Both the position numbers and the translations under genes were made by a program. From Amphiscolops sp. MND2022 (taxonomy: Eukaryota): a stretch of DNA of 64,000 bases. Positions within the stretch are counted from its first letter, which is position 1. Each line of letters starts with the position of its first letter. Shown here in pieces: positions 2,174 through 64,000 of the stretch. Below the pieces are notes generated by a model, which ran no database searches, was not told where the DNA came from, and was given only the letters and a program-made list of their open reading frames with translations. The stretch is from the NCBI GenBank assembly GCA_964187785.1, contig OZ076412.1, forward strand, positions 39,928,001 through 39,992,000. Reading direction: 5' to 3'.

Positions 2174-2478
2174 CTAAAATGTCCGTTTCGATGCTATTTT
2201 GAGAATGCATAGAGTGACAAAACACTTACTAGTTTACATAACAAAAAAAACTCATCCCCGAGGTGTACCTGCAGAGACTCAATGGATCATCTGCAAAATA
2301 GACATATGAACGTGAAAACACAAACCAAATTATGGTCAAATTACCAGTAAATGATTTTACTGGCTAATATATGGTACTTAGTTTGTTATTTTATTGTTGA
2401 GCGTCGTAACTCAATTTTATGCGAATATATAAATTTTGAAGTTTCTTGATTTTTTTTTGTTTCTGCTAACAGTCAATG

Positions 2479-20246: not shown

Positions 20247-20708
20247 CTGTCGACAGAGATGACCATTAAATATATTTCTATCTATTTCATGTAAGTATAC
20301 CAATTATTCGAAAAAACAGCCAAGAAAAACCATTCATTTGATTCGGTCTAAAAACGATTCTTTCAAACAAAAACTGAAATTTTGAAATCACATCCAATGT
20401 CTAAGTTTAGTATGTTTCATTATTGCAGTATCGTTCAAATTCCTTAACAATAGTAGAATCTATTTCAATTTCGCCCATTTAGCGTTCATCTTTTAACAAT
20501 TAGGTTAGTTGCCTGATCCGTTATTATTGCACTATTTCTAATCGCTGCCGTTGTTAGTTGTACGCTGAGGGTACCGGAATGTTAAGTATGGTGTAATCCG
20601 GGAATGATATTTATAAAACGTTAACCCAGTGGAATCATTTGCGCTTATATTTCTCTTCATATAACATTAAAAATTGCATGGAAGGATTTATAGAATGGTC
20701 ATCAATGC

Positions 20709-20910
20709 CTTTGAATTTCTTCCCCCTCTTCGTCGACATATACCAAATAACCTCCCCATTCCTCGTCCCATTCTTGTCCCCGGGGCAGGAAAAATGCATG
20801 AAAGTCTAACCGGTATTCGACTTCATCGTTGTCAACGTGATTCGAGGAGGCAGAGTCTTTTGAATGCGTTTCTTTAGAGTCAGAGAGTAAAGAAAAACAA
20901 CCACGCTCAA
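20709..20910 (-). CDS. OGFOD1: OGFOD1/Tpa1-like prolyl hydroxylase, penultimate exon (C-terminal degenerate DSBH domain)
   Basis: Pyrimidine-rich acceptor cttttctctgtacttttgaactccgactag|TT at 20911/20910. The 202-nt exon reads ERGCFSLLSD...EVEYRLDFHAFFLPRGQEWDEEWGGYLVYVDEEGEEIQ, resembling OGFOD1 G.YTL..D...E..LD...W..E.GG...Y. It ends CAAAG|GCATTG (GC donor, phase 2). Confidence 0.8.
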
Positions 20911-20959
20911 CTAGTCGGAGTTCAAAAGTACAGAGAAAAGTTCTGAAACAAACAAATAA

Positions 20960-23900
20960 ATTGTTATAATTTCCAGCTAAGGGAAAAAACTTGCCCAAAA
21001 AATTCAAAACCATTTCATGTCTAAGCATCGCTAGCGAATGTTGAAAGACTTTCCCGAAGGTTTTGTTTGGCATGGCCAATAGCCGGAACCAACACTCTGA
21101 TGAAGCGGATAAAATTTTCGAGAATCAAGGTTAATTGGCCAAGCATTGGCCCCCAAAGGGAAAGAATCTTTGCCAAACGTGGCATGGCATGTCACTGAAC
21201 AATTTATGTAAGGGAAAAAATTCAATGAAAGTTTGAAAGTCAAACCAGGCGAAATGGAAATACTGCTAAGGCACGACGTTGTCAGTAATAGCATTCCAAA
21301 GCATCCGTATCAGGCTACAGAGTCCTTGTCAATGCACGAATTTAAAGAAGAGGTGCAAAAAATTCAGTGGAAAGGAGTTGTTGGATTTTCTTAGATGCCA
21401 AGAAAAGATGTGCAAACAAACCTAAATTGGGACGATTTAGCCAAGTTTGGCTTTATAAAGCTGTAGCCGATTCTGTCAAAGCGATACCGGGATATTTTGA
21501 AAAATGAAATTCATTTGGATCCCAAGCTGGAGCTTCATATGGCGAAGCGTGTGTTATTCAGCGAAGGTGTAGACAGCCTTATGATATGCAGACGGAACAT
21601 AAAAGTAGAAAAATTGTTGAGATACTATTTTGGTGAACATACTGTGGGTTCTTGTATTTTGATACTTTTACAGTTTTCAGCGATTTAAGCGAAACCAGTG
21701 AAAGTGCAGCAGTGTTTTGTTATTGTTCTTTTAGATACGCGAAGTTTATGTTGATACTGAATTTTGTTTTAGTTTGTTTTAAATCATGTTACACATCGTG
21801 GCTATGAGAACGTCAATTTTATTTCAAGTCTAACCTAACTTAAGAATTTTCTCTACCGCAATATCTCCCTGAAGCAGTGCAGGCGTTCTTCTTGTCGATG
21901 TAAAAATGTTGAGTGTACCAGCGGTTGAGTTGATGAGAAATGTGGTTTTTAAAATGAAAAATGTCCTAAGATCCAACTTTTTGGGGTTGTAAATAAGCAA
22001 TGGAATATTACTTTAGACATCATTTTCTGGTACTGAAAGAATTGCTACGTGTAAAAGAAAGTCATAAACAATCAGGAAAATTGTTTTCGGTATGGGATAG
22101 CACCTCCGTAATTATTGTTACAAACGATTATTGAATGGGTAACCAGGTATTGTTGTTACTTAAAATAATTCAATTGCAAGTATATGGGTGTTCTAAGAGA
22201 TGTAGCAAAACTGAAATGCGCCTCTGTGTTCTGTCTAAAATAGTTTATAAATGCATCGAGGATTTTACCAACTTCGCTGTTTATTGTGATGTGTGATGAA
22301 AGTTTCCTGATGAATTCAATCGTTACTTTTTGCAGTGGATAATCGATACATCCCCTGTAGGTTTTGTCACCGCTCGACAGATCTTTGATGGGAGTTTTGA
22401 AATACTTTTGCACTGCTTTGAAACGTTGCTGCGGTTATTTATCAAACCTCAATGTTTCATGCAGCATGTTGATAGGCTCCTTTATAGTATTCGACAGCCA
22501 TGAGTTAAAAACATCAAATTTTACCGTGTTATCATTACATTAGGTCAAAGCCAACAATCCCTGTCTCTCTCAAAAAATCACTCCCTCTCATATCGCATGT
22601 TATATTATAAATTGTTAAGCTTCAATAATATTAAGAACCTATGTCCAGTGCATAAAACCAGTGATCTCTAGTTTTAATATTGCATTCGAGCACATATCCA
22701 AATTTGAATAATACAAGAATTGCGAATGACAAAATCACATTTTTTTCTGTGAAATTTGACAGTTGACGCAAATGAATCAGTCTTTTATGTTGTAATAAAT
22801 GACTACTACTGAAAACCCTTGCCTTATTCAACATCGTTTAATTTGGAAAGTTCATCATGAAGAATTGGTTTTGGTCGCTGATTTCCTAAAAACAGCAAAG
22901 TTGATTTACAGAAGTCCCAAAATCGAGTCAAATTCATCGACATGGGTTGAGATGTAATGAATGCAAACATGTTGCGTAGCTGAAGATTATATAGGTATGC
23001 GGCCGTGTCGATTAAAATTTTGTGGAGTTCACATTACTACAATTGTCCAAAACACGTTGAAATTTCAATTATATGTACCAAAAACTTATTTCTGCTGAAG
23101 ATACAGAAATGGTCGCATTGTTCAAATTGCTGAAGTCATACACCCAAATGTCGTGAGATTTGCCGGCGTAATTCTGATAGCAGACAGGCCTTTACAAACT
23201 TCTCGCCTCAGCGGTTTGCGATCCAAAAAAACCTTTATGGATTCGAATTATGACAATGGTTGTAATTGTGAACTTACAACCGTGTAATTGCTTGGCCATA
23301 ACCACAAGGACTTCAACTTTTGCGAACAGCTCGCCAAACTGTTGGTTGCATAGTTAATGTACATGAGTAGTATTCACTGGGCTTTGCTTGGGCAATGGCC
23401 GCAGCAACCCAATTTTCGAAGTGTACAGAAGTCTAGAGGTCATTGAAGGCGTTGTACCGAACCCTCCAATTTCCTATAGTAACTAACCCTCTAACAACAG
23501 CGCTCACGAAATTCAACATGAACAAGGTAACACTGAGTTTTCGAGTCAACATTGTGTCTCCCACTTGCAGTGGGTTTTTACTCGACCGACGTATGAGCAA
23601 GTCAACGAACTGTCCTTGTGTTCAGAAGTCTGCGGTTTCTTCTTGGGCACTATCCTGACACAATTTTCACGAGACATTGCTAATTTGGACGATGATCCAT
23701 TCTCGAGAAAACTTCAATGTTCCAGCTTTTGGAAATCTACGAAATAGGCAATCTCGCTTCACATGGTAGTCAAATTCAATTGCAAAATCTGAGAAATGCT
23801 GAGACACGAGTCGTTGATTATGTGAATGAGAACGGTGGCTGGAATGTAGCAGGATATTTTAAAAGTGGCCTGTCGGATATTTATAATACATTGTTACAGT

Positions 23901-26321
23901 GTCCAGCTAATGAGAATAATTTGCCCAAAAATTCAAAACCCTTTCATGTCTAAGAATCGCTAGCGAATGTTGAAAGTCTTCCCCGAAGGTTCTGTTTGGC
24001 ATGGCCCAATAGCCGTAACCAACACTCTGGTGAAGCGCTTAAAATTTTCGAGAATCAAGGTTAATTGGCCAAGCATTGGCCTCATAAGATTAGAATCTTT
24101 GCCAAACGTGGCATGGCATGTCACTGAACAATTTATGTAAGGAAAAAAAATTTCAATGAAAGTTTGAAAGTCAAACCAGGCGAAATGGAAATCCTGGTAT
24201 GGCACGACGTTGTCAGTAATAGCATTCCAAAGCATCTGTATCAGGCTACAGAGCCCTTGTCAATGCACGAATTTAAAGAAGAGGTGCGAAAAATTCAGTG
24301 GAAAGGAGTTGTTGGATTTTCCTAGATGCCAAGAAAAGATGTGCAAACAAACCTAAATTGGGACGATTTAGCCGAGTTTGGCTTTATAAAGCTGTAGCCG
24401 ATTCTGTCAAAGCGATAACGAGATATTTTGAAAAATGAAAATCATTTGGATCCCAAGCTGAAGCTCCATATGGCGAAGCGTGTGTTATTCAGCGAAGGTG
24501 TAGACAGCCTTATGATATGCAGACGAAACATAAAAGTAGAAAAATTGTTGATACTATTTTGGTGAACATACTGTGGGTTCTTGTAGTATTTTGATACTTT
24601 TACAGTTTTTAGCGATTTAAGCGAAACCAGTGAAAGTGCAGCAGTGTTTTGTTATTGTTCTTTCAGATACGCGAAGTTTATGTTAATACTGAATTTTGTT
24701 TTAGTTTACTTTAAATCATGTTACACATCTTGGCTATGAGAACGTCAATTTTATTTCAAGTCTAACCTAACTTAACAAGAATTTTCTCTACCGCAATATC
24801 TCCCTGAATCAGTGCAGGCGTTCTTCTTGTCGATGTAAAAATGTTGAGTGTACCAGCGGTTGAGTTGATGAGAAATGTGGTTTTTAAAATGAAAAATGTC
24901 CTAAGATCCAACTTTTTGGGGTTGTAAATAAGCAATGGAATATTACTTTAGACATCATTTTCTGGTACTGAAAGAATTGCTACGTGTAAAAGAAAGTCAT
25001 AAACAATCAGGAAAATTGTTTTCGGTATGGGATAGCACCTCCGTAATTATTGTTACCAACGATTATTGAATGGGTAACCAGGTATTGTTGTTACTTAAAA
25101 TAATTCAATTGCAAGTATATGGGTGTTCTAAGAGATGTAGCAAAACTGAAATGCGCCTCTGTGTTCTGTCTAAAATAGTTTATAAATGCATCGAGGATTT
25201 TACCAACTTCGCTGTTTATTGTGATGTGTGATGAAAGTTTCCTGATGAATTCAATCGTTACTTTTTGCAGTGGATAATCGATACATCCCCTGTAGGTTTT
25301 GTCACCGCTCGACAGATCTTTGATGGGAGTTTTGAAATACTTTTGCACTGCTTTGAAACGTTGCTGCGGTTATTTATCAAACCTCAATGTTTCATGCAGC
25401 ATGTTGATAGGCTCCTTTATAGTATTCGACAGCCATGAGTTAAAAACATCAAATTTTACCGTGTTATCATTACATTAGGTCAAGGCCAACAATCCCTGTC
25501 CTTCTCAAAATATCACTCCCTCTCATATCGCATGTTATATTATAAATTGTTAAGCTTCAATAATATTAAGAACCTATGTTCAATGTATGAAACCAGTGAT
25601 CTCTCGTTTTACTAATGCATTCGAGCACATATCCAATTTTGAACCAGGCAAGAATTGCGAATGACAAAATCACATTTTTTCTGTGGAATTTGACAGTTGA
25701 CGCAAAAGAATCAGTCTTTTATGTTGTAATAAATGACTACTATTGAAAACCCCTGCCTTATTCAACATCGTTTAATTTGGAAAGTTCATCATGAAGAATT
25801 GGTTTTGGTCGCTGATTCCCTTTAAACAGCAAAGTTGATTTACAGAAGTCCCAAAATCGAGTCAAATTCATCGACATGGGTTGAGATGTAATGAATGCAA
25901 ACATGTTGCGTAGCTGAAGATGATATAGGTATGCGGCCGTGTCTATTGAATTTTTGAGGAGTTTACAGTATAACAATCGTCCAAAACATGTTGAATATTC
26001 AATTATACGTATCAAAAACTCATTTCTGCACAAGATACAAAAATAGCAGCATTGTTCAAATTGCTGAAGTCATACACCCAATTTTCGTGAGAATTGCCGG
26101 CGTAATTTTGATAGCAGACAGGCCTTCTCGCCTCAGCGGTTTGCGATCCAAAAAAACCTTTATGGATTCGAATTATGACAATGGTTGTAATTGTGAACTT
26201 ACAACCTTGTAATTGCTTCGCCATAATCACAAGGACTTCACAGGAGTCGCCTCAACTTTTGCGAACGACTGGCCTAACTGTTGGTTGCATAGTTAATGTA
26301 CATGAGTAGTATTCACTGGGC
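20960..26321 (+). repeat. Left-edge long units (~2.93-kb period), without the OTU module
   Basis: ttgtta...ccagctaa at 20961 and 23891. The identical minus ORF MQKYFKTPIK at 22156 and 25091 gives a period of 2935. Confidence 0.9.
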
Positions 26322-29300
26322 TTTGCTTGGGCAATGACCGCAGCAACCCAATTTTCGAAGTGTACAGAAGTTCTTGAGGTCATTGAAGACGCTGTCCCGA
26401 ACCTACTCCAAATTTCCTATAGTAACCAACCCTCTAACAACAGCGCTCACGAAATTCAACATGAACAAGGTAACACTGAGTTTTATTCGAGGCAACATTA
26501 TGTCTCCCACTTGCAGTGGGTTTTTACGCGACCGACGTATAAGCAAGACAACGAATTGCCCTCGTATTCAGAAGTCTGCGGTTTCTTCTTGGGCGCTAAC
26601 CTGCAGAAATTTCCAATAGGCATTGCTTATTTGGAAGATGATCATTCTCGGGAGAACAGTTCCAATGTTTCCAGCTTTCGAAAATCTTCTGCGCAAATGG
26701 AACTCTTGCTTTACCTGCCAGTCAAACCAAATTGCGAAATTGAGAAATCCAGATGTAAGCTGAATAGTTACCCGCACTTGTAGATGTGGTTGTCCATCAA
26801 CCCGTCAATGCAATAGCGCCGTATGAAACGTCCAGTACCTTTCTCACCTCCAATAGTCGTGATAAGGTACGACAAGCTAGTTGTAGCAATAATGCAGATG
26901 TTTAAATTTCAGAAAATATTAGCATCATTCATCAACAGTTGGGCTTGGATGTTGGTGCCTTTACATTATATTCGGTTGATACATCGGGAACAGTAGCTAG
27001 TGTAGCACCATCCTCATACAAAGATGTTTGTTCTAGCTTAGTAATCCCATTTGTAGCCAGTCTTTTGTCTACAACATGGCTGCAACTTCAAGATTTGTCA
27101 GTTGTCAAACCTCGGATTTAGCATCACGGACCAATGGATGGTGACTGTCTTTTTTCTTCGTTGGCAATCACAGCGACCAAATCTTACTTGCGCACTAAGA
27201 TATGTAATTTTCTTCCAGTATGCAATATTGCTCATTTTTTGGAGAAATACTTTATTGGCAAGTATGGGCGGCTGGAATCTGAAACATGCGCGGATGTCGA
27301 AATCCTGCTATGGCACGACGTTGTCAGTAATAGCATTTCAAAGCATCCCTATCAGGCTACAGAGCCCTTGTCAATGCACGAATTTAAAGAAGAGGTGCAA
27401 ATAATCAGTGGAAAGGAGTTGTTGGATGTTCTTAGATGCCAAGAAAAGATGTGCAAACAAACCTAAATTGGGACGATTCAGCCGAGTTTGGCTTTATAAA
27501 GCTGTAGCCGATTCTCTCAGATCGATACAGAGATATTTTGAAAAATGAAATTCATTTGGATCCCAAGCTTGAGCTTCATATGGCGAAGCGTGTGTTATTC
27601 AGCGAAGGCGTAGACAGGCTTATGATATGCAGACGGAACATAATAAAGTATTAAAATTATTGATAATATTTTGGTGAACATACTGTGGGTGATAAACTTT
27701 ACCGTGTTATCATTACATTGTAGGTCAAACAATGAACCTACTTTGCTTGGGCAATGACCGCAGCAACCCAATTTTCGGAGTGTACAGAAGTCTTGAGGTC
27801 ATTGAAGACGCTGTCCCGAACCTACTCCAATTTCCTATAGTAACCAACCCTCTAACAACAGCGCTCACGGAATTCAACATGAACAAGGTAACACTGAGTT
27901 TTATTCGAGGCAACATTATGTCTCCCACGTGCAGTGGGTTTTTACGCGACCGATGTATAAGCAAGACAATGCATTGCCCTCGTATTCAGAAGTCTGCAGT
28001 TTCTTCTTGGGCGCTAACCTGCAGAAATTTCCAATAGGCATTGCTTATTTGGAAGATGATCATTCTCGGGAGAACAGTTCCAATGTTTCCAGCTCTCGAA
28101 AATCTTCTGCGCAAATGGAACTCTTGCTTTACCTGCCAGTCAAACTAAATATGAGAAATCCAGATGTAAGCTGAATAGTTACCCGCACTTGTAGATGTGG
28201 TTGTCCATCAACCCGTCAATGCAATAGCGCCGTATGAAACGTCCAGTACCTTTCTTACCTCCAATAGTCGTGATAAGGTACGACAAGCTAGTTGTAGCAA
28301 TAATGCAGATGTTGAAATTCCAAAAAATATCAGCATCATTCATCAACAGTTGGGCTTGGATGTTGGTGCCTTTACATTATATTCGGTTGATACATCGGGA
28401 ACAGTAGCTAGTGTAGCACCATCCTCATACAAAGATGTTTGTTCTAGCTTAGTAATCCCATTTGTAGCCAGTCTTTTGTCTACAACATGGCTGCAACTTC
28501 AAGATTTGTCAGTTGTCAAACCTCGGATTTAGCATCACGGACCAATGGTTGGTGACTGTCTTTTTTCTTCGTTGGCAATCACAGCGACCAAATCTTACTT
28601 GCGCACTAAGATATGTAATTTCCTTCCAGTATGCAATATTGCTCACTTACTGGAGAAATACTTTATTGGCAAGTATGGGCGGCTGGAATCTGAAACATGC
28701 GCGGATGTCGAAATCCTGCTATGGCACGACGTTGTCAGTAATAGCATTTCAAAGCATCCCTATCAGGCTACAGAGCCCTTGTCAATGCACGAATTTAAAG
28801 AAGAGGTGCAAATAATCAGTGGAAAGGAGTTGTTGGATTTTCTTAGATGCCAAGAAAAGATTTGCAAACAAACCTAAATTGGGACGATTTAGCCGAGTTT
28901 GGCTTTATAAAGCTGTAGCCGATTCTCTCAGATCGACACAGAGATATTTTGAAAAATGAAATTCATTTGGATCCCAAGCTTGAGCTTCATATGGCGAAGC
29001 GTGTGTTATTCAGCGAAGGCGTAGACAGCCTTATGATATGCAGACGGAACATAAAAAAGTATAAAAATTATTGATACTATTTTGGTGAACATACTGTGGG
29101 TGATAAACTTTACCGTGTTATCATTACATTGTAGGTCAAACAATGAACCTACTTTGCTTGGGCAATGACCGCAGCAACCCAATTTTCGGAGTGTACAGAA
29201 GTCTTGAGGTCATTGAAGACGCTGTCCCGAACCTACTCCAATTTCCTATAGTAACCAACCCTCTAACAACAGCGCTCACGGAATTCAACATGAACAAGGT

Positions 29301-50300: not shown

Positions 50301-51680
50301 CTGCAGCAACCCAATTTTCGATGTGTACAGAAGTCTTGAGGTCATTGAAGACGCTGTCCCGAACCTACTCCAATTTCCTATAGTAACCAACCCTCTAACA
50401 ACAGCGCTCACGGAATTCAACATGAACAAGGTAACACTGAGTTTTATTCGAGGCAACATTATGTCTCCCACTTGCAGTGGGTTTTTACGCGACCGTCGTA
50501 TAAGCAAGACAACGAATTGCCCTCGTATTCAGAAGTCTGCAGTTTCTTCTTGGGCGCTAACCTGCAGAAATTTCCAAAAGGCATTGCTTATTTGGAAGAT
50601 GATCATTCTCGGGAGAACAGTTCCAATGTTTCCAGCTTTCGAAAATCTTCTGCGCAAATGGAACTCTTGCTTTACCTGCCAGTCAAACTAAATCTGAGAA
50701 ATCCAGATGTAAGCTGAATAGTTACCCGCACTTGTAGATGTGGTTGTCCATCAACCCGTCAATGCAATAGCGCCGTATGAAACGTCCAGTACCTTTCTTA
50801 CCTCCAATAGTCGTGATAAGGTACGACAAGCTAGTTGTAGCAATAATGCAGATGTTGAAATTTCAGAAAATATTAGCATCATTCATCAACAGTTGGGCTT
50901 GGATGTTGGTGCCTTTACATTATATTCGATTGATACATCGGGAACAGTAGCTAGTGTAGCACCATCCTCATACAAAGATGTTTGTTCTAGCTTAGTAATC
51001 CCATTTGTAGCCAGTCTTTTGTCTACAACATGGCTGCAACTTCAAGATTTGTCAGTTGTCAAACCTCGTATTTAGCATCACGGACCAATGGATGGTGACT
51101 GTCTTTTTTCTTCGTTGGCAATCACAGCGACCAATCTTACTTGCGCACTAAGATATGTAATTTCCTTCCAGTATGCAATATTGCTCATTTTTTGGAGAAA
51201 TACTTTATTGGCAAGTATGGGCGGCTGGAATCTGAAACATGCGCGGATGTCGAAATCCTGCTATGGCACGACGTTGTCAGTAATAGCATTTCAAAGCATC
51301 CCTATCAGGCTACAGAGCCCTTGTCAATGCACGAATTTAAAGAAGAGGTGCAAATGATCAGTGGAAAGTAGTTGTTGGATTTTCTTAGATGCCAAGAAAA
51401 GATGTGCAAACAAACCTAAATTGGGACGATTTAGCCGAGTTTGGCTTTATAAAGCTGTAGCCGATTCTCTCAGATCGACTCAGAGATATTTTGAAAAATG
51501 AAATTCATTTGGATCCCAAGCTTGAGCATCATATGGCGAAGCGTGTGTTATTCAGCGAAGGCGTAGACAGCCTTATGATATGCAGACGGAACATAAAAAA
51601 GTATAAAAATTATTGATACTATTTTGGTGAACATACTGTGGGTGATAAACTTTACCGTGTTATCATTACATTGTAGGTCA
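26322..51680 (+). repeat. Homogeneous core: 18 head-to-tail copies of a 1407-1411 bp unit
   Basis: MNLLCLG-type ORF starts at 27732, 29143, 30554, 31965, 33373, 34781, 36192, 37601, 39008, 40417, 41824, 43231, 44638, 46045, 47454, 48865 and 50275. The first copy starts at 26322 without the short junction. Confidence 0.98.
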
Positions 51681-54600: not shown

Positions 54601-56150
54601 ATTCGAATTATGACAGAATGGTTGTAATTGTAAAAATACAATCGTGTAATTTCTTCGCCATAATCACAAGGACTTCACAGGAGTCGCCTCAACTTTTGCG
54701 AACGACTGGCCTAACTGTTGGTTGCATAGTTAATGTACATGAGTAGTATTCACTGGGCTTTGCTTGGGCAATGACCGCAGCAACCCAATTTTCGAAGTGT
54801 ACAGAAGTCTTGAGGTCATTGAAGACGCTGTCCCGAACCTACTCCAATTTCCTATAGTAACTAACCCTCTAACAACAGCCCTCACGAAATTCAACATGAA
54901 CAACGAACACTGAGTTTTATTCGAGGCAACATTATGTCTCCCACTTGCAGTGGGTTTATACGCGACCGACGTATAAGCAAGACAACGAATTGCCCTCGTA
55001 TTCAGAAGTCTGCGGTTTCGTCTTGGGCGCTAACCTGCAGAAATTTCCAATAGGCATTGCTTATTTGGAAGATGATCATTCTCGGGAGAACAGTTCCAAG
55101 GTTTCCATCTTTCGAAAATCTTCTGCGCAAATGGAACTCTTGCTTCAGCTGCCAGTCAAACTAAATTGCGAAATCTGAGAAATCCAGATGTAAGCTGAAT
55201 AGTTACCCGCACTTGTAGATGTGGTTGTCCATCAACCCGTCAATGCAATAGCGCCGTATGAAACGTCCAGTACCTTTCTCACCTCCAATAGTCGTGATAA
55301 GGTACGACAAGCTAGTTGTAGCAATAATGCAGATGTTGAAATTTCAGAAAATATTAGCATCATTCATCAACAGTTGGGCTTGGATGTTGGTGCCTTTACA
55401 TTATATTCGGTTGATACATCGGGAACAGTAGCACCATCCTCATACAAAGATGTTTGTTCTAGCTTAGTAATCCCATTTGTAGCCAGTCTTTTGTCTACAA
55501 CATGGCTGCAACTTCAAGATTTGTCAGTTGTCAAACCTCGGATTTAGCATCACGGACCAATGGATGGTGACTGTCTTTTTTCTTCGTTGGCAATCACAGC
55601 GACCAAATCTTACTTGCACACTAAGATATGTAATTTCCTTCCAGTATGCAATATTGCTCATTTTTTGGAGAAATACTTTATTGGCAAGTATGGGCGGCTG
55701 GAATCTGAAACATGCGCGGATGTCCAAATCCTGCTATGGCACGACGTTGTCAGTAATAGCATTTCAAAGCATCCCTATCAGGCTACAGAGCCCTTGTCAA
55801 TGCACGAATTTAAAGAAAAGGTGCAAATATTCAGTGGAAAGGATTTGTTGGATTTTCTTAGATGCCAAGAAAAGATGTGCAAACAAACCTAAATTGGGAC
55901 GATTTAGCCGAGCTTGGCTTTATAAAGCTGTAGCCGATTCTCTCAGATCGATACAGAGATATTTTGAAAAAAGAAATTCATTTGGATCCCAAGCTTGAGC
56001 TTCATATGGCGAAGCGTGTGTTATTCAGCGAAGGCGTAGTCAGCCTTATGATATGCAGACGGAACATAAAAAAGTATAAAAATTATTGATACTATTTTGG
56101 TGAACATACTGTGGGTGATAAACTTTACCGTGTTATCATTACATTGTAGG
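51676..56150 (+). repeat. Two ~2.24-kb units (core unit plus an ~830-bp module missing from the core)
   Basis: ggtcaaagccaacaatccc at 51676, 53913 and 56149 (periods 2237 and 2236). Confidence 0.93.
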
Positions 56151-57589
56151 TCAAAGCCAACAATCCCTGTCCTTCTCAAAATATCAGTCCCTAGCACTTG
56201 GCATGTTATGTTATTTATTGTTAAGCTTCAATAAAGTTAAGAACCTATGTTCAAGGTATAACAACCACTGATCTCCAGTTTTACTAATGAATCCGGGCAC
56301 ATACCCAGTTTTGTTTCATGCCAGATTTACGAATGGCAAAAGTTTGTGGAATTTGTGAGTTGACGGAAATGAATCAGTCTTTCAAGTTGTAATTAATGAC
56401 TGTCACTGAAAACCCTGCTTTATTCAACATCGTTTAATTTGGAAAGTTCATCATGAAGAATTGGTTTTGGTCGCTGATTCCCTATAAACAGCAAAAAGTT
56501 GATTTACAGAAGTCCCAAAATCGAGTCAACTTCATCGACATGGGTTGAGATGTAATGAAAGCTAACGTGTTGCGTAGCTGAAGATGATATAGGTATGCGG
56601 CCGTGTCTATTGAATTTTTGAGGAGTTTACAGTATTACAATCGTCCAAAACACGTTGAATATTCAATTATACATATCAAAAACTTATTTCTGCTCAAGTT
56701 ACAAAAATGGCAGCATTGTTCAAATTGCTGAAGTCATACATCCCAAATTTCGTGAGATTTGCCGCGAATTTCTGATAGCAGACAGGCCTTTACAAACTTC
56801 GCCTCAGCGGTTGGCGATCCAAAAAAACCTTTATGGATTCGAATTATGACAGAATGGTTGTAATTGTAAAAATACAATCGTGTAATTTCTTCGCCATAAT
56901 CACAAGGACTTCACAGGAGTCGCCTCAACTTTTGCGAACGACTGGCCTAACTGTTGGTTGCATAGTTAATGTACATGAGTAGTATTCACTGGGCTTTGCT
57001 TGGGCAATGACCGCAGCAACCCAATTTTCGAAGTGTACAGAAGTTCTTGAGGTCATTGAAGACGCTGTCCCGAACCTACTCCAATTTCCTATAGTAACTA
57101 ACCCCCTAACAACAGCCCTCACGAAATTCAACATGAACAACGAACACTGAGTTTTATTCAAGTCAACATTGTGTCTCCCACCTGCAGTGGGTTTTTTGCG
57201 CGACCGACGTATAAGCAAGACAACGAACTTTTCTTGTGTTCAGAAGTCTGCGGTTTCTTTTCGGGCGCTATCCTGCTGAAATTTTCAAATTTTCAAGAGA
57301 CATTGCTAATTTGGACGATGATCCATTCTCGAGAAAACTTCAATGTTCCAGCTTTTGGAAATCTGCGATATAGGCAATCTCGCTTCACAGGGTAGTCAAA
57401 ACCAATGGCAAAAGCTCAGAAAAGATGTGACACGAATCGTTGACTATGTGAATGACAACGGTGGGTGGAATGTAACAGGATATTTTAAAAGTGGCCTGTC
57501 GGATATTTATGATAGATTGCCTTATAGATAGCCTAATTGTTGTGATGAACTTATTAAATAGCATCGGCTGTTCAAGAAGTCTTTTCAGA

Positions 57590-58010
57590 ATAGTCGTTAA
57601 AACGACCGTCCGTCAAGATGGGTGCATCTCGAACAAATTCAACTTCAACTAACCCGGCGAAGAAAGAGGAAGGTAGTAATCACCTGGTCGAATGCACAGG
57701 GCCCGGAGTGGATGGGAGGAGCGGCTGCGTCATCTGGACCAACATCTGGGTACCAATGTTGATCCCCAAAAATGTCTTCTCTAGACCTTTCCACTGTGGT
57801 TTCTGTGCCGTAGAAGAGCTCAAAAAGATCCAATGTTCTGCTGCTGAAGACCTGTCTCCTGTCATCGAGGCTGACAGCATAGAATATTGACGCAGGAAAA
57901 ATGTCCGGATCTTCGGTGTGAAGGATCCAGGCGAGGACGTCTTCGCACAGGTGGTTAGTGTGGCGGAGAAAGCAGGTGTGTCAATAACAATAAAAAAATC
58001 TGAGAAATGC
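57590..58010 (+). mobile_element. 5' fragment of a non-LTR retrotransposon ORF1 (PHD-like plus RRM start) embedded in the array
   Basis: ATG at 57618 gives ...VEC...GCVIW...RPFHCGFC (degenerate PHD-like), then EADSIEY*RRKNVRIFGVKDPGEDVFAQV, resembling the EQY.RR.N.RI.G motif of LINE ORF1 proteins. It has one in-frame stop and is truncated at ~58000. Confidence 0.6.
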
Positions 58011-59927
58011 TGTGACATGAGTCGCTGACTATGTGAATGAGAACGGTGGCTGGAATGTACCAGGATATTTTAAAAGTGGCCTGTCGGATATTTATAATAC
58101 ATTGTTATAGTGTCCAGCTAATGAGAATAATTTGCCCAAAAATTCAAAAACATTTCATGTCTTAGCATCGCTAGCGAAGGTTGAAACACCCCGATTTGTT
58201 TGGCATGGCCAATATCCGGAACCAATACTCTGGTGGAGCGATTGATATTTTCGAGAATCAAGGTTAATTGGCCAAGCATTGGCCCCCATAGGGATAGAAT
58301 CTTTGCCAAACGTGGCATGGCATGTCACTGAACAATTTATGTAAGGAAAAAATTCAATGAAAGTTTGAAAGTCAAACCAGGCGAAATAGAAATCCTGCTA
58401 TGGCACGACGTTGTCAGTAATAGCATTTCAAAGCATCCCTATCAGGCTACAGAGCCCTTGTCAATGCACGAATTTAAAGAAGAGGTGCAAATAATCAGTG
58501 GAGACGTGTTGGATTTTCTTATACGCCAAGAAAAGATGTGCAAACAAACCTAAATTGAGACAATTTAGCTGAGTTTGGCTGTATAAAGCTGTAGCCGATT
58601 CTGTCAGAGCGATACAGAGATATTTTGAAAAAAATTCATTTGGATCCCAAGCTGGAGCTTCATATGGCGGAGCGTGAGTTATTCAGCGAAGGTGTGGACA
58701 GCATTATGATATGCAGACGGAACATAAGTACAAAAATTATTGAGATGCTATTTCGGTGAACATACTGTGGGTTCTCTCGTAGTCTTTTGTTACTTTTACA
58801 GTTTTTAGCAATTTAAGCAAAACCAGTGAAAGTGCAGCAGTGTTTTGTTATTGTTCGTTTGGATACGCGAAGTTTATGTTGATACTGAATATTGTTTTAG
58901 TTATTTTTAAATCATGGTAAACATGGTGCCTATGAGAACGTCAATTTTATTTCAAGCCTAACCAAACTTAACAAAAACTTTTCTCAACCATGATATCTCC
59001 CTGAATCAGCGTAGGCGTTTTCGTTGCCGATGTAAAATTGTTGAGTGTAACGATGGTATTTGCAAATCCAATGAATGATGTAATCAGGTGTAACAGCGGT
59101 TGATGGGAAATGTGTTTTTAAATGAAAAATGTCCGAAATTCCAGCTCTTCCAAATTCTTGCATTTCCAAATTTATGGGTGTTGTAACAGCCGTAGCAAAA
59201 CAAAAATGCACCTCTATGTTCTGTCAAAAATAGTTAATAGTTTTTAAGTGCATTGACGCTTTTATCAACTTCGCTGTTTGTGATGCCTAATGAAAGTTTC
59301 CTGATGAATTCAATCGTTAGTTTTTGCAGTGGATATTCGATACATCCCCTGAAGGTTCTGTCACCCCTCTTTGATGGTGGTTTTGAAATACTTTTGGACT
59401 GCTTTGAAACGTTGCTGTGGTCGTTTATCAACCCTCAATGTTCCATGCAGCATGCTGATAGTCTCCTTTATAATATTCGACAGCCATGAGTTAAAAACGT
59501 CAACTTTTCCCGTGTTATCATTACATTAGGTCAAAGCCAACAATCCCTGTCCTTTTCAAAACATCACTCCCTCTCATATCGCATGTTACATTGTTAAGCT
59601 TTAATAATATTAAGAACCTATGTTCAATGTATAAAACCAGTGATCTCTCGTTTTACTAATGCATTCGAGCACATATCCAATTTTGAACCAGGCAAGAATT
59701 GCGAATGGCAAAAATCACAACTTTTCTGTGAAACTTGACAGTTGACAGAAATGAATCAGTCTTCTATGTTGTATTAAATGACTACCATTGAAAACCCTTG
59801 CTTCATTCAACATAGTTTAATTTGGAAAGTTCATCATGAAGAATTGGTTTTGGTCGCTGATTCCCTTTAAACAGCAAAGTTGATTTACAGAAGTCCCAAA
59901 ATCGAGTCAAATTCAACGACATGGATG

Positions 59928-59943
59928 TCTCTCTCTCTCTCTC
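59928..59943. repeat. (TC)8 microsatellite at an array rearrangement junction
   Basis: atgg-atg-tctctctctctctctc-attgttatag: one module stops here and another starts. Confidence 0.9.
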
Positions 59944-61039
59944 ATTGTTATAGTGTCAAGCTAAGGGAAAATATTTGACCAAAAATTCAAAACCATTTCT
60001 TCATGTCTTAGCATCGCTAGCGAATGTTGAAAGACTTACCTGAAGGTTTTGTTTGGCATGGCCAAATAGCCGGAACCAACACTCTGGTGAAGAGATTAAA
60101 ATGTTCGAGAATCAAGGTTAATTGGCCAAGCATTGGCCACATAGGGATAGAATCTTTGCCAAACGTGGCTTGGCATGTCACTGAACAATTTATATAAGGA
60201 AAAAATTCAATGAAAGTTTGAAAGTCTAACCAGGCGAAATGGAAATCCTGCTATGGCACGACGTTGTCAGTTATAGCATTCCAAAGCATACGTATCAGGC
60301 TACAGAGCCCTTGTCAATACACGAACTTAAAGAAGAGGTGCGAAAAATTCAGTGGAGAGTTGTTGGATTTTCTTATATGACAAGAAAAGATGCGCAAACA
60401 AACCTGATTTGAGACGATTTAGATGAGTTTGGTTTTATAAAGCTGTAGCCGATTCTGTCAAAGCGATACAGAGATATTTTGAAAAATGAAATTCATTTGA
60501 ATCCCAAGCTGGAGCTTCATATGGCGAAGCGTGTGTTATTCAGCGATGGTGTAGACAGCCTTATGATATGCAGACGGAACATAAAAAAGAAGAACATATA
60601 TTGAGATACTATTTTGGTGAACATACTGTGGGTGGTGAATTTTACCGTGTTATCATTACATTAGGTCAAAGCCAACAATCCCTGTCCTTCTCAAAATATC
60701 ACTTCCTCTCACTCCGCATGTTATGTAATTTATTGTTAAGCTTCAATAATGTTTAGAGCCTATGTTCAATGTATAACAACCACTGATCTCCACTTTTACT
60801 AATGCATCTGGGCACATGTCCAGTTTTGTTTCATGCAAGATTTACGAAAGGCAAAATCAGAAATTTTGAGGAATTTTTGAGTTGACGGAAATGAATCAGT
60901 CTTTTATGTTGTAATAAATGACTACCATTGAAAACCCTTGCTTAATTCATCATCGTTTAATTTGGAAAGTTCATCATGAAGAATTAGTTTTGGTCGCTGA
61001 TTCCCTATAAACAGCATAATGATCGCGCAATAATTATTA

Positions 61040-61117
61040 GTCCACATGGCATAGTGGATCAGTCTTTGCCTTCGAACCGGTCTGCGCCAGTTCAAATCTG
61101 CGACAGTTCTGTTTTTT
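61040..61117 (+). pseudogene. Degenerate tRNA-like / SINE-head Pol III unit
   Basis: A-box-like TGGCATAGTGG (61047-61057), B-box-like AGTTCAAATC (61089-61098) and a T-run at ~61112. The acceptor stem is imperfect and I could not assign an anticodon. Confidence 0.35.
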
Positions 61118-61469
61118 GATATCTTTGCTGATTTATTCTCTGACCTTTAATATTGATCAATCACTTTTCTTGACATTAATAACATTGCTCATTTTCATGT
61201 AAAATATTTACCATTCATTGCTCACCATTGTAAACGTTATTACATACGTGTAAACAATCGGTTCAGACCTTTTTGTTGTCCCTTTGGCTTCAAATGCCTA
61301 ATTTGTCGGTTAAAAACCAGCTGATAACCAGTCCCCCATTTCTCATTTCTTGTATCATTTCTTTATCATTCATACCATCAACAAACGTTATCAAACACCG
61401 ATCTGTTGCCTTGAGCCAAGACCCAATTCTCAATAGTTTGAACTCTATCTTTGAGTTCCTTCAATCTTC

Positions 61470-62060
61470 CTCCTTTACATTATATTCGGTTGATACATGG
61501 GGAACAGTAGCTAGTGTAGCACCATCCTCGTACAAAGATGTTTGTTCTACCTTAGTATTCCCATTTGTAGCCAGTCTTTTGTCTACATCATGGCTGCAAC
61601 TTCAAGATTTGTCAGTTGTCAAACATCGGATTTAGCATCACGGACCAAAGGATGGTGACTGTCATTTTTTCTTCGTTGGCGATGGGATCAATCACAGCGA
61701 CCACGTCTTACTTGCGCACTAAGATATGTAATTTCCATCCAGTATGCAATATTTATTGCTCATTTTTTGGAGAATTACTTTATTGGTGAGTCTGGGCGGT
61801 TGGAATCTGAAACATGCGCGGATGTCGATGATTACCTGCAAAAGACAAAAATGAAGCGGGATGGCGTTAACGGAACATGTGTGGAATTGTACGCATTTGC
61901 TCAATTAGCACACGTTGATGTATATGTTTATCAATGTCGATATTCATCGTGTGCGGTTTACAGTTTTGCAGGCGATCGAACGGACGTTGACATGGTGCTA
62001 TTATTGATTGTTAACAATTGGACTGGCAATCATTTTGATGCTTTACGGATGTTAGCAGTT
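61470..62060 (+). pseudogene. OTU-family cysteine protease / deubiquitinase domain (decayed, full span)
   Basis: Cys box DGDC at ~61650, then LRTKICNF, YLQKTKMKRDGVNGTCVELYAFAQLAHVDVYVY and the His box NHFDAL (~62030). It has one TAG and frameshifts near the Cys box. Confidence 0.8.
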
Positions 62061-62199
62061 CAAGATGCAGCAGCACGGTTGTCTCCTGAATCTACTGGTG
62101 GACTGAGATCTGCTCACAAACCTCCAATTATTTTCTCTACTACCAGCGCGTCAAATTCCAAGATTGTCCACTGTTTGATGAATATGAAGATTGTCATGT

Positions 62200-63057
62200 A
62201 TCAAAGGATAATGAATCAGAAGAACCTTATGATGAATTCCGCCGTCAGATGATTGTTGCAAGCGATGGTTCCCGGATGTCGCTGCGACAAATTTGTCTGT
62301 GTCTTCAATCCTAACAGTTCTTTGGGCGAAAGTGATTTGAATGGATACTTCGGTTTCGAAAAAGTTCTTTACAAGAAAAGTGTTTTGAGATAAATTTTCA
62401 TTCTCAAAAATAGACGATAGCAGATTTGTTGGAGATCATGTATGCGGTATGTGTGCGAGAAGTATCCTTTGCGTTGGGCGATTTCGAAAGCCACTGATGT
62501 CAAGCAGAGGAAGTTTGTCCTTTGTGTTTTGATTTCAACAAATTTGAATTAAAAACGCCGTTGATGGAGGTTTGCATGACCGGCAGTGTTGTTTAAACTT
62601 CTGACTGATCATTCTCTGAGTGATGAAGCAGCAACAAATTTGTATATGTATTGTACCTTCTACATTTCGAGTTGGGCAAAGTCAACAGGAATGTTTCATC
62701 GTGTCATTCGTCGTTCAGCAAAAGACCCGGTAATGTTTGATATTACGAAATGCAAATTAAAATTCAGCGAAAAAAATATGTCTTTATGGGGCAAAGATTT
62801 GGAAGGGAATCACACAATATATCATGTCTCATGGTCAACAATATATACAGTTCAACACTAACCTTTCGTCAGAAATTGATGAAATATCACATTTTTGGTA
62901 CAGTGGAATTGACAAAAAGGAAGCTTATCAGCAACTATTGTTTTCTGGTGGAAAACACAATCAATTTGATGTACGAAACAGCTATTTACAGAACATTAGA
63001 AGTCATTTGGAAATGTCTGGGTTGCTAAAAGACTTTCGGAATAGACCCATTACTTAA
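62200..63057 (+). pseudogene. Decayed continuation: acidic linker, Cys/His-rich putative zinc finger and an unknown C-terminal region
   Basis: Frame-hopping translation gives PGCRCDKFVC, HVCGMCARSI and EEVCPLCFDF, then open stretches 62586-62861 and 62824-63057. Confidence 0.4.
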
Positions 63058-63985
63058 ATTGCAGCATTTTCAAGGATGTCACAGCCTTTTTTCGCATCCG
63101 CAGTCGTACTTAGACCTTTTTGGTCTAACACAAAACTTGATAATCACTCAATGTGAGCACCTGACATTTAGAATGAAAACAAAGTGTATCGACATGTCAA
63201 AAGTAGTGATCGAGAGTTTTTCAACAAGCCCTGTTTTTCAGGCAATTTTAATACCGGTGCAGTTTTTACCGGTGCTCATCGGTTCTTGCATTAACGCTCA
63301 CTGACAATGAACATTATGCTTGTGGCTATGAAAAAGCTTTCATATTGAACTTCCGCTTGGTCTTCACACATGTTTATATTTCGATCTCAACAAAGAAAAA
63401 AAATTGATTCAACACCCATTTTTCGTCCGGACGAAATTTGTATTTTCGCCTGTAGACCAACATCACACACTCAGACACAACGCGTGGCCCCACAATACTT
63501 GAAAACACGAGTGCGACTGGTATGAGCGGCTTCAGTGACATTTGACCGGCGATAACACGTTTTCCAAACTAAACTTCCCCTTGGAAGTGCAAATTTCGAA
63601 GTCAATGTCAGGGTTAAAAGTTTTCATCAAAACGTACCCTTTTTCCGTCAAGCACAACTAACATTATCAGAGTTGAGCATATGAGGTCTATACAGGGGTG
63701 CATGGAAAAATTGTTGCCTAAAGCGTTGTCTAACACAATTACCACAATATGTTCACTATAATGTTGGCCCATTTTCTCAAAAAATTCGTGAAATAAACAT
63801 GATTCACCAGTTTCATTCGAGAGGGTAGTTGGACTCTGGATGTATCAGCAAGCCTAATTTTTCCGTGTCTCAGAAACTACCTCCTTACGGTTGAAAATTT
63901 GCACAGCATAGACAACACACAGGTCAAATTAACATACATTTGCAAAGACAGAATCGCTTCGACAGTAGCAAACAAAATTATGAAA

Positions 63986-64000
63986 ACTTACCTGACACCA
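63986..64000 (-). other. Consensus 5' splice donor at the window edge (possible upstream OGFOD1 exon end)
   Basis: The minus strand reads TGGTGTCAG|GTAAGT with GT at 63991-63990. Only 9 putative exonic nt are visible. Confidence 0.3.

What the first reader, a model, noticed from the sequence alone, without database searches (positions are those of the whole stretch)
20911..63991. A ~40-kb mobile-element-derived tandem array appears to fill one intron of an OGFOD1-like gene
Seen: the penultimate OGFOD1-like exon has a clean acceptor at 20911, and the array begins only ~50 bp upstream of it in gene sense. I found no further OGFOD1-like exon between 20911 and 63990. A perfect CAG|GTAAGT donor lies at 63991 and could be phase-compatible (TCA G|TT GAG gives S-V-E). 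The two visible exons have no stops or frameshifts. Known: OGFOD1/Tpa1 is a conserved ribosomal-protein prolyl hydroxylase. Inference: an apparently intact housekeeping gene carries a >40-kb intron made mostly of a recently expanding macrosatellite, whereas the other introns here are 161, 462 and 8707 nt.
Basis: partly seen in the sequence, partly recalled or inferred. Interest (0 to 1): 0.75.

Follow-up and report, generated by a model that had tools for sequence, protein, structure and literature searches.

The report
Helitron-derived repeat array filling OGFOD1 intron
A single-copy, apparently intact gene for the ribosomal prolyl hydroxylase OGFOD1 has one 44-kb intron, about 80 times longer than its other introns, and 94% of it is a tandem array that grew out of a decayed rolling-circle (Helitron-like) transposon; this is a clear but not unprecedented example of repeats bloating an intron.

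Summary
The core claim holds, but both splice sites were misplaced. OGFOD1 lies on the minus strand. Exons 1-4 sit just beyond the window end (extended coordinates 68129-65371). Exons 5-6 are at 20942-20709 and 20246-20087. The six exons join into a 499-aa open frame that aligns end to end with 14 orthologues (350 bits) and keeps the HxD...H/Arg catalytic residues. The gene appears single-copy.

Intron 4 runs from the donor CG|GTAAGT (65370) to the acceptor tttgtttgtttcag| (20943), which is 44,428 nt. The other introns are 584, 493, 576 and 462 nt.

The array starts at 20960, 17 nt from exon 5. It has 2 x 2.9 kb, 17 x 1.41 kb (97.7-99.9% identical) and 3 x 2.2 kb units, then decayed copies and a transposase remnant to 62804. 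Its coding scraps match a Helitron-like family (Rep/PIF1 helicase/GIY-YIG, OTU-like) and lie antisense to OGFOD1.

A distant relative has the same intron at 7.0 kb, filled with unrelated tandem repeats. No RNA data exist, so splicing is inferred. The case is ordinary in kind. The scan has unchecked notes of similar intronic arrays elsewhere in this genome.

The parts
20087..20246 (-). OGFOD1 exon 6, the last coding exon, including the stop codon at 20089-20087
   Evidence: Pfam Ofd1_CTDD positions 209-253 match at 20108-20245. tblastn with orthologues gives 20245/20248 to 20105. The relative's uninterrupted exon reads ...VYVDEEGEEIQR-IIPKHN..., which fixes the exon start at 20246.
20247..20708 (-). 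Intron 5, 462 nt, probably GC-AG (AAG|GCATTG ... gtcgacag|G).
   Evidence: The GC-AG model scores 350 bits against the orthologue HMM, versus 327 bits for GT-AG. The relative has no intron here and its sequence matches the GC-AG product. The intron sequence is unique in the genome.
20709..20942 (-). OGFOD1 exon 5 (phase 2 start; encodes R-TFLCTFELRLVERGCFSLLSD...WGGYLVYVDEEGEEIQ)
   Evidence: Several orthologue alignments begin at 20941. The acceptor is tttatttgtttgtttcag| with AG at 20944-20943.
20943..64000 (-). Intron 4, the part inside the window. The intron continues to its donor at extended coordinate 65370 (L011:1370), for a total of 44,428 nt.
   Evidence: The donor CG|GTAAGT ends exon 4 at 65371 in phase 2. 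CG + A gives an Arg codon and an open frame into exon 5. There is no OGFOD1-like hit inside. Upstream exons in extended coordinates: e1 68129-67857, e2 67272-66963, e3 66469-66178, e4 65601-65371.
20943..20959 (-). The only non-repeat sequence at the 3' end of intron 4: 17 nt holding the pyrimidine tract and AG
   Evidence: An alignment of four unit copies shows homology starting at 20960. A branch-point-like ttataac (about 20968-20962) lies inside the first array unit.
20960..26809 (+). Two long array units (about 2.93 kb, 93% identical to each other)
   Evidence: They carry broken fragments of the ORF337 accessory protein, residues 14-289.
26810..50763 (+). Seventeen 1407-1411-bp units, the homogeneous core of the array
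   Evidence: Pairwise identity is 97.7-99.9% (mean 98.5%), and neighbouring units are the most alike. Each unit equals the 2.2-kb unit minus about 840 bp. Each carries ORF337 residues 120-261. Each also carries the unit segment that in the 2.2-kb units (53324-53656) holds the N-terminal half of an OTU-like domain with a DGDC motif.
50764..57441 (+). Three units of 2197-2245 bp (95-97% identical)
57995..61828 (+). Decayed partial copies of the units (84-96% identical pieces)
61664..62804 (+). Decayed 5' part of a Helitron-like Rep/helicase gene (residues 273-682, including the OTU-like region), next to the array
   Evidence: tblastn with an intact 2820-aa RepHel gives 33-38% identity, E 4e-15 and 1e-9. 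The ORF at 61767-62252 matches giant RepHel ORFs elsewhere in the genome.
63989..63994 (-).
20669..20670 (.). Branch point in the read graph: a probable non-reference insertion of a dispersed element in intron 5 on another haplotype
   Evidence: A loose end lies behind 20669 in 3 of 4 runs. Its 25 letters occur 38 times in the genome, mostly as inverted pairs 17-22 kb apart.

Best explanation
This is the single OGFOD1/Tpa1-type gene of the genome. It lies on the minus strand and has six exons.

An element of a Helitron-like (rolling-circle) family inserted antisense into intron 4, immediately upstream of the 3' splice-site pyrimidine tract. A chimeric piece of it was then amplified into a head-to-tail array. 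The piece joins part of the accessory gene that normally follows the transposase to the OTU-like start of the transposase.

The array has 2.9-kb, 2.2-kb and 1.41-kb deletion variants. The 1.41-kb variant was expanded or homogenised most recently, presumably by unequal crossing-over or replication slippage. The array and the adjacent transposase remnant make up 41.8 kb (94%) of a 44,428-nt intron.

The gene stays functional because all the extra DNA is intronic and its coding remnants lie antisense. Strong canonical splice sites are retained (CG|GTAAGT ... tttgtttgtttcag|). The branch point is now supplied by the first array unit.

Shown: the exon set, the reading frame, the conserved catalytic residues, the array anatomy and the Helitron-family origin. 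Inferred: that the intron is actually spliced, the order of events and the amplification mechanism.
For: Gene:
- Pfam 2OG-FeII_Oxy_4 scores 75 bits at extended 66958-67191, and this locus is the only one in 1.07 Gb to match.
- Exon 2 aligns to human OGFOD1 residues 138-237 at E 1e-22, with the HDD motif.
- tblastn with 14 orthologues gives six colinear blocks and nothing in between.
- The spliced model is 499 aa with no stops. Introns 1-4 are GT-AG and phase-compatible.
- The model scores 350 bits over HMM positions 45-486 of 487, with the distal His and Arg conserved.
- A candidate second Ofd1_CTDD locus is not OGFOD1.

Intron ends:
-.
- In a relative, exon 5 starts at the same codon and phase, after ttccag|A.

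Array:
-.
- The DNA is unique to this locus.
- A read contig bridges exon 5, the acceptor and the array start with no differences. Array-segment word depth is 6.6-10.7 times the flank.

Helitron origin:
- ORF337 fragments match at 38-66% amino-acid identity.
- The OTU-like ORF matches giant ORFs that carry Helitron_like_N, PIF1 and GIY-YIG.
- The OTU domain scores 19.4 bits.
- ORF337 lies 1-4 kb downstream of RepHel at many loci.
- A RepHel remnant sits at 61664-62804.
- OTU upstream of RepHel, and GIY-YIG, are reported in Helitron-like elements (PMC11417382).
Against: - There is no RNA evidence at all. No RNA run holds the locus, so the 65371|20942 junction is inferred from frame and homology only.
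- The array comes within 17 nt of the acceptor. The branch point must therefore lie in transposon-derived sequence, which could impair splicing.
- The last intron needs a weak GC donor.
- Only short-read contigs of one sample, probably the assembly's own, were available, so the copy number is unverified. Observed word-depth ratios (about 7 in three runs, 10.7 in one) are below the 12-15 expected from the assembly. The tool warns that contig depth is not a copy number.
- No Rep or helicase domain itself survives inside the intron. Helitron termini were not looked for.
- OTU is below Pfam's cut-off.
Confidence: 0.78

Rival explanations
1. Assembly artefact. The array's length or copy number, and hence the 44-kb intron size, is materially wrong, or the two gene halves are mis-joined across a collapsed or expanded repeat.
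For: Units that are 98-99.9% identical are hard to assemble. Only short-read contigs of one sample could be laid, and none spans more than one unit. The depth ratio of 6.6-10.7 is lower than the 12-15 expected from the assembled copies.
Against: A contig bridges exon 5 into the array with no differences in three runs, and a second haplotype does the same. The array has an ordered architecture, with diverged long units at both edges and a homogeneous core, and unit lengths shift gradually (1411, 1408, 1409, 1407, 1410), unlike a random mis-assembly. The flanks on both sides carry the matching halves of one gene in the right order, strand and phase. The relative also has its longest, repeat-filled intron at this position.
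Confidence: 0.1
2. The gene is no longer functional as one unit. The array insertion next to the acceptor broke splicing, so exons 5-6 are an orphan 3' fragment or the locus is a young pseudogene.
For: There is no expression data. Array sequence replaces everything upstream of the last 17 nt of the intron. The last intron has a non-canonical GC donor. A nonsynonymous Arg-to-Gln variant segregates in exon 5. The protein is only 41-50% identical to most orthologues in its best-conserved exon.
Against: It is the only OGFOD1 locus found in the genome, and the family is conserved across eukaryotes. All six exons are open, and the catalytic and C-terminal motifs are conserved. Exons 5-6 are 44% identical over 133 aa to the relative, with no stop or frameshift. 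Outer array units are 7-15% diverged, which implies the insertion is old, yet no coding decay has appeared.
Confidence: 0.09
3. The intron runs from a donor at 63991 to an acceptor at 20911, with a further small exon ending at 63992.
For: A perfect CAG|GTAAGT is present at 63994-63989. An AG is present at 20912-20911.
Against: Joining exon 4 (which ends CG) to 20910 gives CGT TGA, a stop. Starting at 20910 would drop ten residues that align to a conserved block in orthologues and in the relative. The pyrimidine tract before 20911 is poor, while the one before 20943 is strong.
Confidence: 0.03

Closest known systems
OGFOD1 / Tpa1 / Sudestada1 / Ofd1 (2-oxoglutarate- and Fe(II)-dependent prolyl 3-hydroxylase of ribosomal protein uS12/RPS23)
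   Same: It has the two-domain architecture: an N-terminal catalytic double-stranded beta-helix with HxD...H and Arg, and a C-terminal Ofd1_CTDD-type domain. It aligns end to end with orthologues. It matches human OGFOD1 (PDB 4NHX) and yeast Tpa1.
   Different: The sequence is rather divergent: 41-50% identity to most orthologues in the best exon, and 62% to one relative. It is a compact six-exon gene apart from one 44-kb intron. Activity and expression were not tested.
Satellite-like tandem arrays derived from Helitron/Helentron elements (for example Crassostrea gigas Helentron-borne arrays, PMC7492417; Drosophila DINE-1/Helentrons, PMC4067079; review PMC12628747)
   Same: The tandem array's unit comes from a rolling-circle element family. 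The array sits beside a decayed copy of the element, at the 5' side of its transposase gene.
   Different: Units here are 1.4-2.9 kb chimeras of coding sequence (accessory ORF plus the OTU-like start of RepHel), not the short (about 100-200 bp) non-coding repeats carried by non-autonomous Helentrons. The array DNA is confined to one locus rather than dispersed. Helitron termini were not identified.
Satellite-containing gigantic introns of Drosophila Y-linked fertility genes (kl-3, kl-5; PMC6508621, PMC11207136)
   Same: One intron of an otherwise ordinary gene is dominated by tandem repeats, which must be transcribed and removed for the gene to work.
   Different: The size is 44 kb, not megabases. 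The units are complex and transposon-derived, not simple satellites. The host is a conserved, presumably broadly expressed gene on a large assembled contig, not a testis-specific Y gene. No evidence exists for a special expression programme.
Macrosatellites (kilobase-unit, copy-number-variable arrays such as human D4Z4, DXZ4, RS447; from general knowledge)
   Same: It shares the kilobase units, tens of copies, high identity between neighbours and diverged edge copies, and the units contain gene-derived sequence.
   Different: Copy-number polymorphism is not shown here. The unit ORFs are broken. The array is intronic and antisense to its host gene.

Membership tests
OGFOD1/Tpa1 family | N-terminal 2OG-Fe(II) oxygenase domain with the HxD...H iron triad and the 2OG-binding Arg | tested here: met
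   PF13661 scores 75 bits, above its 27-bit cut-off. Exon 2 aligns to human OGFOD1 138-237 at E 1e-22 with LLCHDD. SYHEV and PRIALSGWFH align to the conserved His and Arg columns.
OGFOD1/Tpa1 family | C-terminal Ofd1_CTDD-type second domain | tested here: inconclusive
   Single exons score 14.3 and 25.1 bits, below Pfam's 27-bit cut-off. The spliced protein does align through the whole C-terminal domain of a 14-orthologue HMM. The relative's fused exon carries a faint PF10637 hit.
OGFOD1/Tpa1 family | Full-length colinearity with orthologues and an intact reading frame | tested here: met
   The model is 499 aa with no stops and scores 350 bits over HMM positions 45-486 of 487.
OGFOD1/Tpa1 family | Prolyl hydroxylation of ribosomal protein uS12 | not testable with these tools
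   This is a biochemical assay.
Functional (spliced) intron | Junction reads joining the flanking exons | not testable with these tools
   No RNA run holds the locus. The four runs laid are DNA contigs.
Functional (spliced) intron | Canonical splice signals, compatible phase and a conserved position | tested here: met
   The signals are CG|GTAAGT and tttatttgtttgtttcag|A, in phase 2. The relative has the intron at the same codon and phase.
Macrosatellite / kilobase-unit tandem array | Head-to-tail copies of a unit of 1 kb or more with high identity | tested here: met
   There are 17 units of 1407-1411 bp at 97.7-99.9% identity, 3 units of about 2.2 kb and 2 units of about 2.9 kb.
Macrosatellite / kilobase-unit tandem array | Copy-number polymorphism between individuals | tested here: inconclusive
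   Only one sample was available. Depth ratios of 6.6-10.7, against 12-15 expected, hint at a difference between haplotypes, but contig depth is not a copy number.
Helitron-like element (HLE), as the source of the array | Rep (HUH) plus PIF1-type helicase transposase | tested here: inconclusive
   Intact relatives of the array's coding remnants carry Helitron_like_N (29.0 bits against a 28.9 cut-off) and PIF1 (46.6 bits), plus GIY-YIG. Inside the intron only residues 273-682 survive, upstream of the Rep domain.
Helitron-like element (HLE), as the source of the array | Characteristic termini, a 3' hairpin and insertion between specific dinucleotides | not tested
   Element ends were not mapped, either in the intron or in the intact copies.
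Helitron-like element (HLE), as the source of the array | OTU cysteine-protease domain upstream of RepHel (a feature of many HLEs) | tested here: inconclusive
   PF02338 scores 19.4 bits (E 0.0016), below its 23.3-bit cut-off, in the intact copy. There is no Pfam hit for the array or donor fragments. DGDC and NHFD motifs are visible.

The most novel reading that the evidence does not exclude
In this lineage, kilobase-unit arrays, many of them derived from Helitron-like elements, may expand preferentially inside introns of constitutively transcribed genes. Three observations fit this. The OGFOD1 array lies antisense to its host. The same orthologous intron of a distant relative is filled by unrelated tandem repeats. 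The scan has unchecked notes of 25-31-kb arrays in MRPS9, UPF1, CHD1 and MED12 introns of this genome. Two causes are possible. Host-gene transcription may turn such arrays into a steady source of antisense RNA (small-RNA precursors) against the element family. Alternatively, transcription-coupled processes may drive their expansion.
Probability: 0.1. Interest if true: 0.65.

Novelty: new member of a known kind. Interest (0 to 1): 0.3.

Why it matters
The case is well delimited. A conserved single-copy gene tolerates a 40-kb transposon-derived macrosatellite that starts 17 nt from a splice acceptor, so the branch point must come from the repeat itself. It shows the path from an autonomous Helitron-like element to a chimeric coding fragment and then to a locus-specific array. 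The orthologous intron of a relative is independently repeat-filled, so the locus gives a concrete place to ask whether some introns are preferred sinks for tandem expansion. It is also a practical warning for annotation: both true splice sites differ from the most obvious consensus matches. None of this changes current understanding. Transposon-derived satellites and repeat-bloated introns are both known.

Tried and rejected
- Tandem Repeats Finder found nothing because its period limit is 500 bp. k-mer spacing and the repeat finder were used instead.
- Pfam scans of eight array and donor ORFs and of the 337-aa accessory ORF gave no family. A protein-atlas search of that ORF gave only sub-threshold noise. 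A database search found 17 unnamed relatives. Its function stays unknown.
- A PDB search with exon 5 alone and with the OTU-like region was uninformative.
- The sequencing-run search found no RNA run, so the junction could not be tested. The one read-laying run showed DNA contigs only.
- Apparent exon 5/6 matches in the relative's locus L025 were repeat-borne chance hits. The real fused exon was found in L026.
- No nucleotide or translated similarity links the relative's intron-4 repeats to this array or to the Helitron proteins.
- The second-best Ofd1_CTDD hit (C4:50.58 Mb) is not an OGFOD1 paralogue.
- Intron 5 is not a multicopy 'introner'.
- The 17-22-kb inverted-termini element whose end appears as a loose end at 20669 gave no diagnostic Pfam domain in four large ORFs. 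A Polinton assignment was therefore dropped.
Full report
**Coordinates.** The window is G000:C4:39928001-39992000. I fetched the next 20 kb (L011, L012). I use 'extended' coordinates that continue the window numbering, so 64001 equals L011:1. The window contains no N.

**The array.** TRF reports nothing because its maximum period is 500 bp. k-mer spacing and repeat finding show a head-to-tail array with periods of 1407-1411 bp, about 2236 bp and about 2935 bp. BLAST of representative units against the region resolves these parts:
- two units of about 2.93 kb (20960-26809; 93% identical to each other);
- seventeen units of 1.41 kb (26810-50763);
- three units of 2.2 kb (50764-57441; 95-97% identical);
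- decayed partial copies up to about 61.8 kb.

The 1.41-kb unit is the 2.2-kb unit minus about 840 bp. The 2.2-kb and 2.9-kb units share two segments and differ in others. The 17 short units are 97.7-99.9% identical (mean 98.5%). Neighbours are the most alike (99.1% at distance 1, falling to 98.4% at distance 7). This pattern of diverged edges and a homogeneous core is what local unequal exchange produces. An alignment of four copies places the left edge of repeat homology at 20960.

The array DNA is essentially unique to this locus in the 1.07-Gb genome. Elsewhere there are only 65-69% matches of 190-435 bp on C1 and one short match on C10.

**The gene.**
- A six-frame Pfam search of the whole genome finds 2OG-FeII_Oxy_4 only at this locus. 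It scores 75 bits at extended 66958-67191 on the minus strand, about 3 kb past the window end.
- The best Ofd1_CTDD hit in the genome is at window 20108-20245, minus strand.
- The exon-2 ORF aligns to human OGFOD1 residues 138-237 (PDB 4NHX, E 1e-22, LLCHDD motif) and to yeast Tpa1.
- A profile-free search of 1.84 billion proteins with that exon returned OGFOD1-type proteins, the closest non-self at 62% identity.
- I took 14 full-length orthologues and ran tblastn on the 84-kb extended region. It gives six colinear minus-strand blocks: 68117-67827, 67278-66955, 66476-66195, 65711-65382, 20941-20708 and 20248-20105. There is no OGFOD1-like hit between 21.1 kb and 65.38 kb.

Reading the sequence at the block ends gives this model:

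| Exon | Extended coordinates |
|---|---|
| e1 | 68129-67857 |
| e2 | 67272-66963 |
| e3 | 66469-66178 |
| e4 | 65601-65371 |
| e5 | 20942-20709 |
| e6 | 20246-20087 |

The introns are 584, 493, 576, 44,428 and 462 nt. Introns 1-4 are GT-AG.

Exon 4 ends ...AAC CG|GTAAGT, in phase 2. Exon 5 follows tttatttgtttgtttcag| and begins with A. This completes an Arg codon and runs on into TFLCTFELRLVERGCFSLLSD.

The spliced product is 499 aa without a stop. Against an HMM built from the 14 orthologues it scores 350 bits over positions 45-486 of 487. HxD, the distal His, the Arg of R-x-x-x-S-G-W-F-H and the C-terminal motifs are all aligned. The second-best Ofd1_CTDD locus is not an OGFOD1 gene, so this appears to be the only copy.

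- The acceptor at 20911 (ctccgactag|) has a poor pyrimidine tract.
- Joining exon 4's CG to 20910 gives CGT TGA, a stop.
- Starting at 20910 would also delete ten residues that align to the conserved C-x-x-E-[LV]-R block.
- The donor at 63991 is a real CAG|GTAAGT. There is no in-phase acceptor for the frame exon 5 needs.
- No exon is missing from the protein alignment.
- Of the 'other introns' quoted, only the 462-nt one belongs to this gene.

**Intron 5.** Two models of equal length exist. The other is GC-AG (20708..20247). The GC-AG product scores 23 bits higher and is confirmed by a relative, described next.

**A relative.** The 62%-identical protein P0019 comes from a 216-kb contig in ENA assembly record ERZ25071359, which the look-up tool describes as a metagenome assembly. 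In that contig:
- Exons 1+2 are fused, and so are exons 5+6.
- The fused 5+6 exon reads ...WGGFVVYVDEEGEEIQRIIPKHN... This matches the GC-AG product here.
- It begins R-SYCCEFELRKIEKG after ttccag|A. That is the same codon position and phase as exon 5 here, so intron 4 is orthologous.
- Intron 4 is 7,026 nt there, against about 1.5-1.8 kb for its other introns.
- It too is almost entirely tandem repeats: about 1.04-kb units in three to four copies, and 1.7-1.8-kb units in two copies.
- These repeats show no nucleotide or translated similarity to the array here or to the Helitron proteins.

Repeat filling of this intron therefore happened independently in the two lineages.

**Origin of the array.** The units carry broken ORFs on the plus strand, antisense to OGFOD1.
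- One set of fragments matches a 337-aa ORF on C1 at 38-66% identity. That ORF belongs to a family with at least 117 genomic matches, many of them intact. It has unnamed relatives in public data and no Pfam domain.
- The other fragment is the N-terminal half of an OTU-like domain with a DGDC motif.
- A longer, frameshifted copy sits just beyond the array (61.6-62.25 kb). Its 161-aa ORF matches giant open frames of 2747-2853 aa elsewhere.
- One such ORF (2820 aa) carries Helitron_like_N, PIF1 helicase and a C-terminal GIY-YIG nuclease. Its homologous N-terminal region scores 19.4 bits for OTU, which is below the cut-off.
- The genome holds many intact relatives: 869 first-look candidates, of which the 17 scored include open frames of 2345-2853 aa. 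The 337-aa gene recurs 1-4 kb downstream of them.
- tblastn places residues 273-682 of this RepHel at 61664-62804 on the plus strand.
- OTU upstream of RepHel, and a captured GIY-YIG, are described for Helitron-like elements (PMC11417382). Tandem arrays derived from Helentrons are known (PMC7492417, PMC4067079, PMC12628747).

The intron holds a decayed Helitron-like element. The array unit is a chimera of its accessory gene and the start of its transposase. In an intact element these pieces are about 11 kb apart and in the opposite order. The order seen here fits a junction between two head-to-tail copies followed by deletion; that part is inference. Helitron-derived sequence (20960-62804) is 41,845 nt, or 94% of the intron. 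Without it the intron would be about 2.6 kb.

**Proximity to the splice site.** Only 17 nt (ttatttgtttgtttcag, 20959-20943) separate the repeat from exon 5. Any branch point at the usual distance lies in the first array unit. A ttataac sits about 20 nt upstream of the AG.

**Reads.** No RNA run holds the locus. Four runs of one sample and one study hold it as DNA. Laid on 19500-25499, they are short contigs.
- One contig of 446-500 bp bridges 20640-21085/21139, covering exon 5, the acceptor and the array start. It shows no differences in three runs.
- In the fourth run the contig carries a second haplotype. It has 20781 C>T (Arg to Gln), 20804 G>A (synonymous) and a TTC insertion at 21013. Both haplotypes therefore have the array at the same place.
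- Word depth of the segment shared by the short units is 6.6-7.3 times the flank in three runs and 10.7 times in one.
- The assembly predicts 12-15 times. This could mean fewer copies on the other haplotype, but contig depth is not a copy number and the runs disagree with each other.
- Spanning long reads were not available.

**Assessment.** Splicing is inferred from frame, signals, conservation of intron position and the lack of any other OGFOD1 copy. It has not been observed.

In kind, this is a transposon-derived macrosatellite inside an intron. That combines two known phenomena: Helitron/Helentron-derived tandem arrays, and repeat-dominated long introns such as the Drosophila Y genes (PMC6508621).

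Earlier unchecked notes of this scan report comparable arrays in introns of MRPS9, UPF1, CHD1 and MED12 in the same genome. I confirmed only that a 1.13-kb-period array exists at the place given for the UPF1 note. If those notes hold, this is one instance of a genome-wide habit. That lowers its individual novelty and makes the genome-level question the more interesting one.

Noticed in passing
window 20669-20670 (intron 5 of OGFOD1): In 3 of 4 DNA runs a contig follows the reference up to 20669 and then continues with 25 unrelated letters. That 25-mer occurs 38 times in the genome (up to one mismatch allowed), mostly as inverted pairs 17-22 kb apart. This indicates the terminus of a dispersed element with inverted ends, so there is probably a non-reference insertion on another haplotype. 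Four large ORFs of one copy gave no diagnostic Pfam domain.
   Followed up: partly
window 20781, 20804, 21013: A second haplotype in the sequenced sample carries 20781 C>T (Arg to Gln in exon 5), 20804 G>A (synonymous) and a TTC insertion at 21013 in the first array unit.
   Followed up: partly
L025 / L026 (ENA ERZ25071359, contig ctg36865): A distant relative's OGFOD1 lacks introns 1 and 5. Its orthologous intron 4 (same codon, same phase) is 7,026 nt and is filled with tandem repeats of about 1.04 kb and 1.7-1.8 kb that are unrelated to the array here.
   Followed up: yes
L036:1432-9894 (G000:C1:3619931-3628393, minus strand) and many other loci: The genome holds intact giant Helitron-like transposase ORFs of 2345-2853 aa. 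The 2820-aa copy scanned carries Helitron_like_N, PIF1 and a C-terminal GIY-YIG nuclease, plus an OTU-like N-terminal region. There are 869 first-look candidates in the genome. Two copies lie in tandem about 18-21 kb apart on C1.
   Followed up: partly
L023:1234-2247 (G000:C1:3615219-3616229) and at least 117 genomic matches: A gene of about 330 aa with no Pfam domain recurs 1-4 kb downstream of the Helitron-like transposase. It is sometimes itself in short tandem sets (periods of 1.6, 2.9, 3.1 and 3.2 kb at other loci). It has 17 unnamed relatives in public data. Its function is unknown.
   Followed up: partly
window 21257-21649 and 24188-24409 versus 19500-20669: Word depth of the array segment is 6.6-10.7 times the unique flank, but the assembled copies predict 12-15 times. 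This may reflect a copy-number difference between haplotypes or be an artefact of contig depth.
   Followed up: partly
window 1053-2225 (minus strand): A 390-aa open frame with a Major Facilitator Superfamily domain (E 1e-13) marks the neighbouring gene downstream of OGFOD1.
   Followed up: no
G000:C4:14736500-14746499 (L043): A tandem array with a period of about 1.13 kb (also 2.25 kb) fills this 10-kb stretch and ends near 14,746,500. No match to the Helitron proteins used here was found in this 10-kb stretch or the 40 kb to its right.
   Followed up: partly
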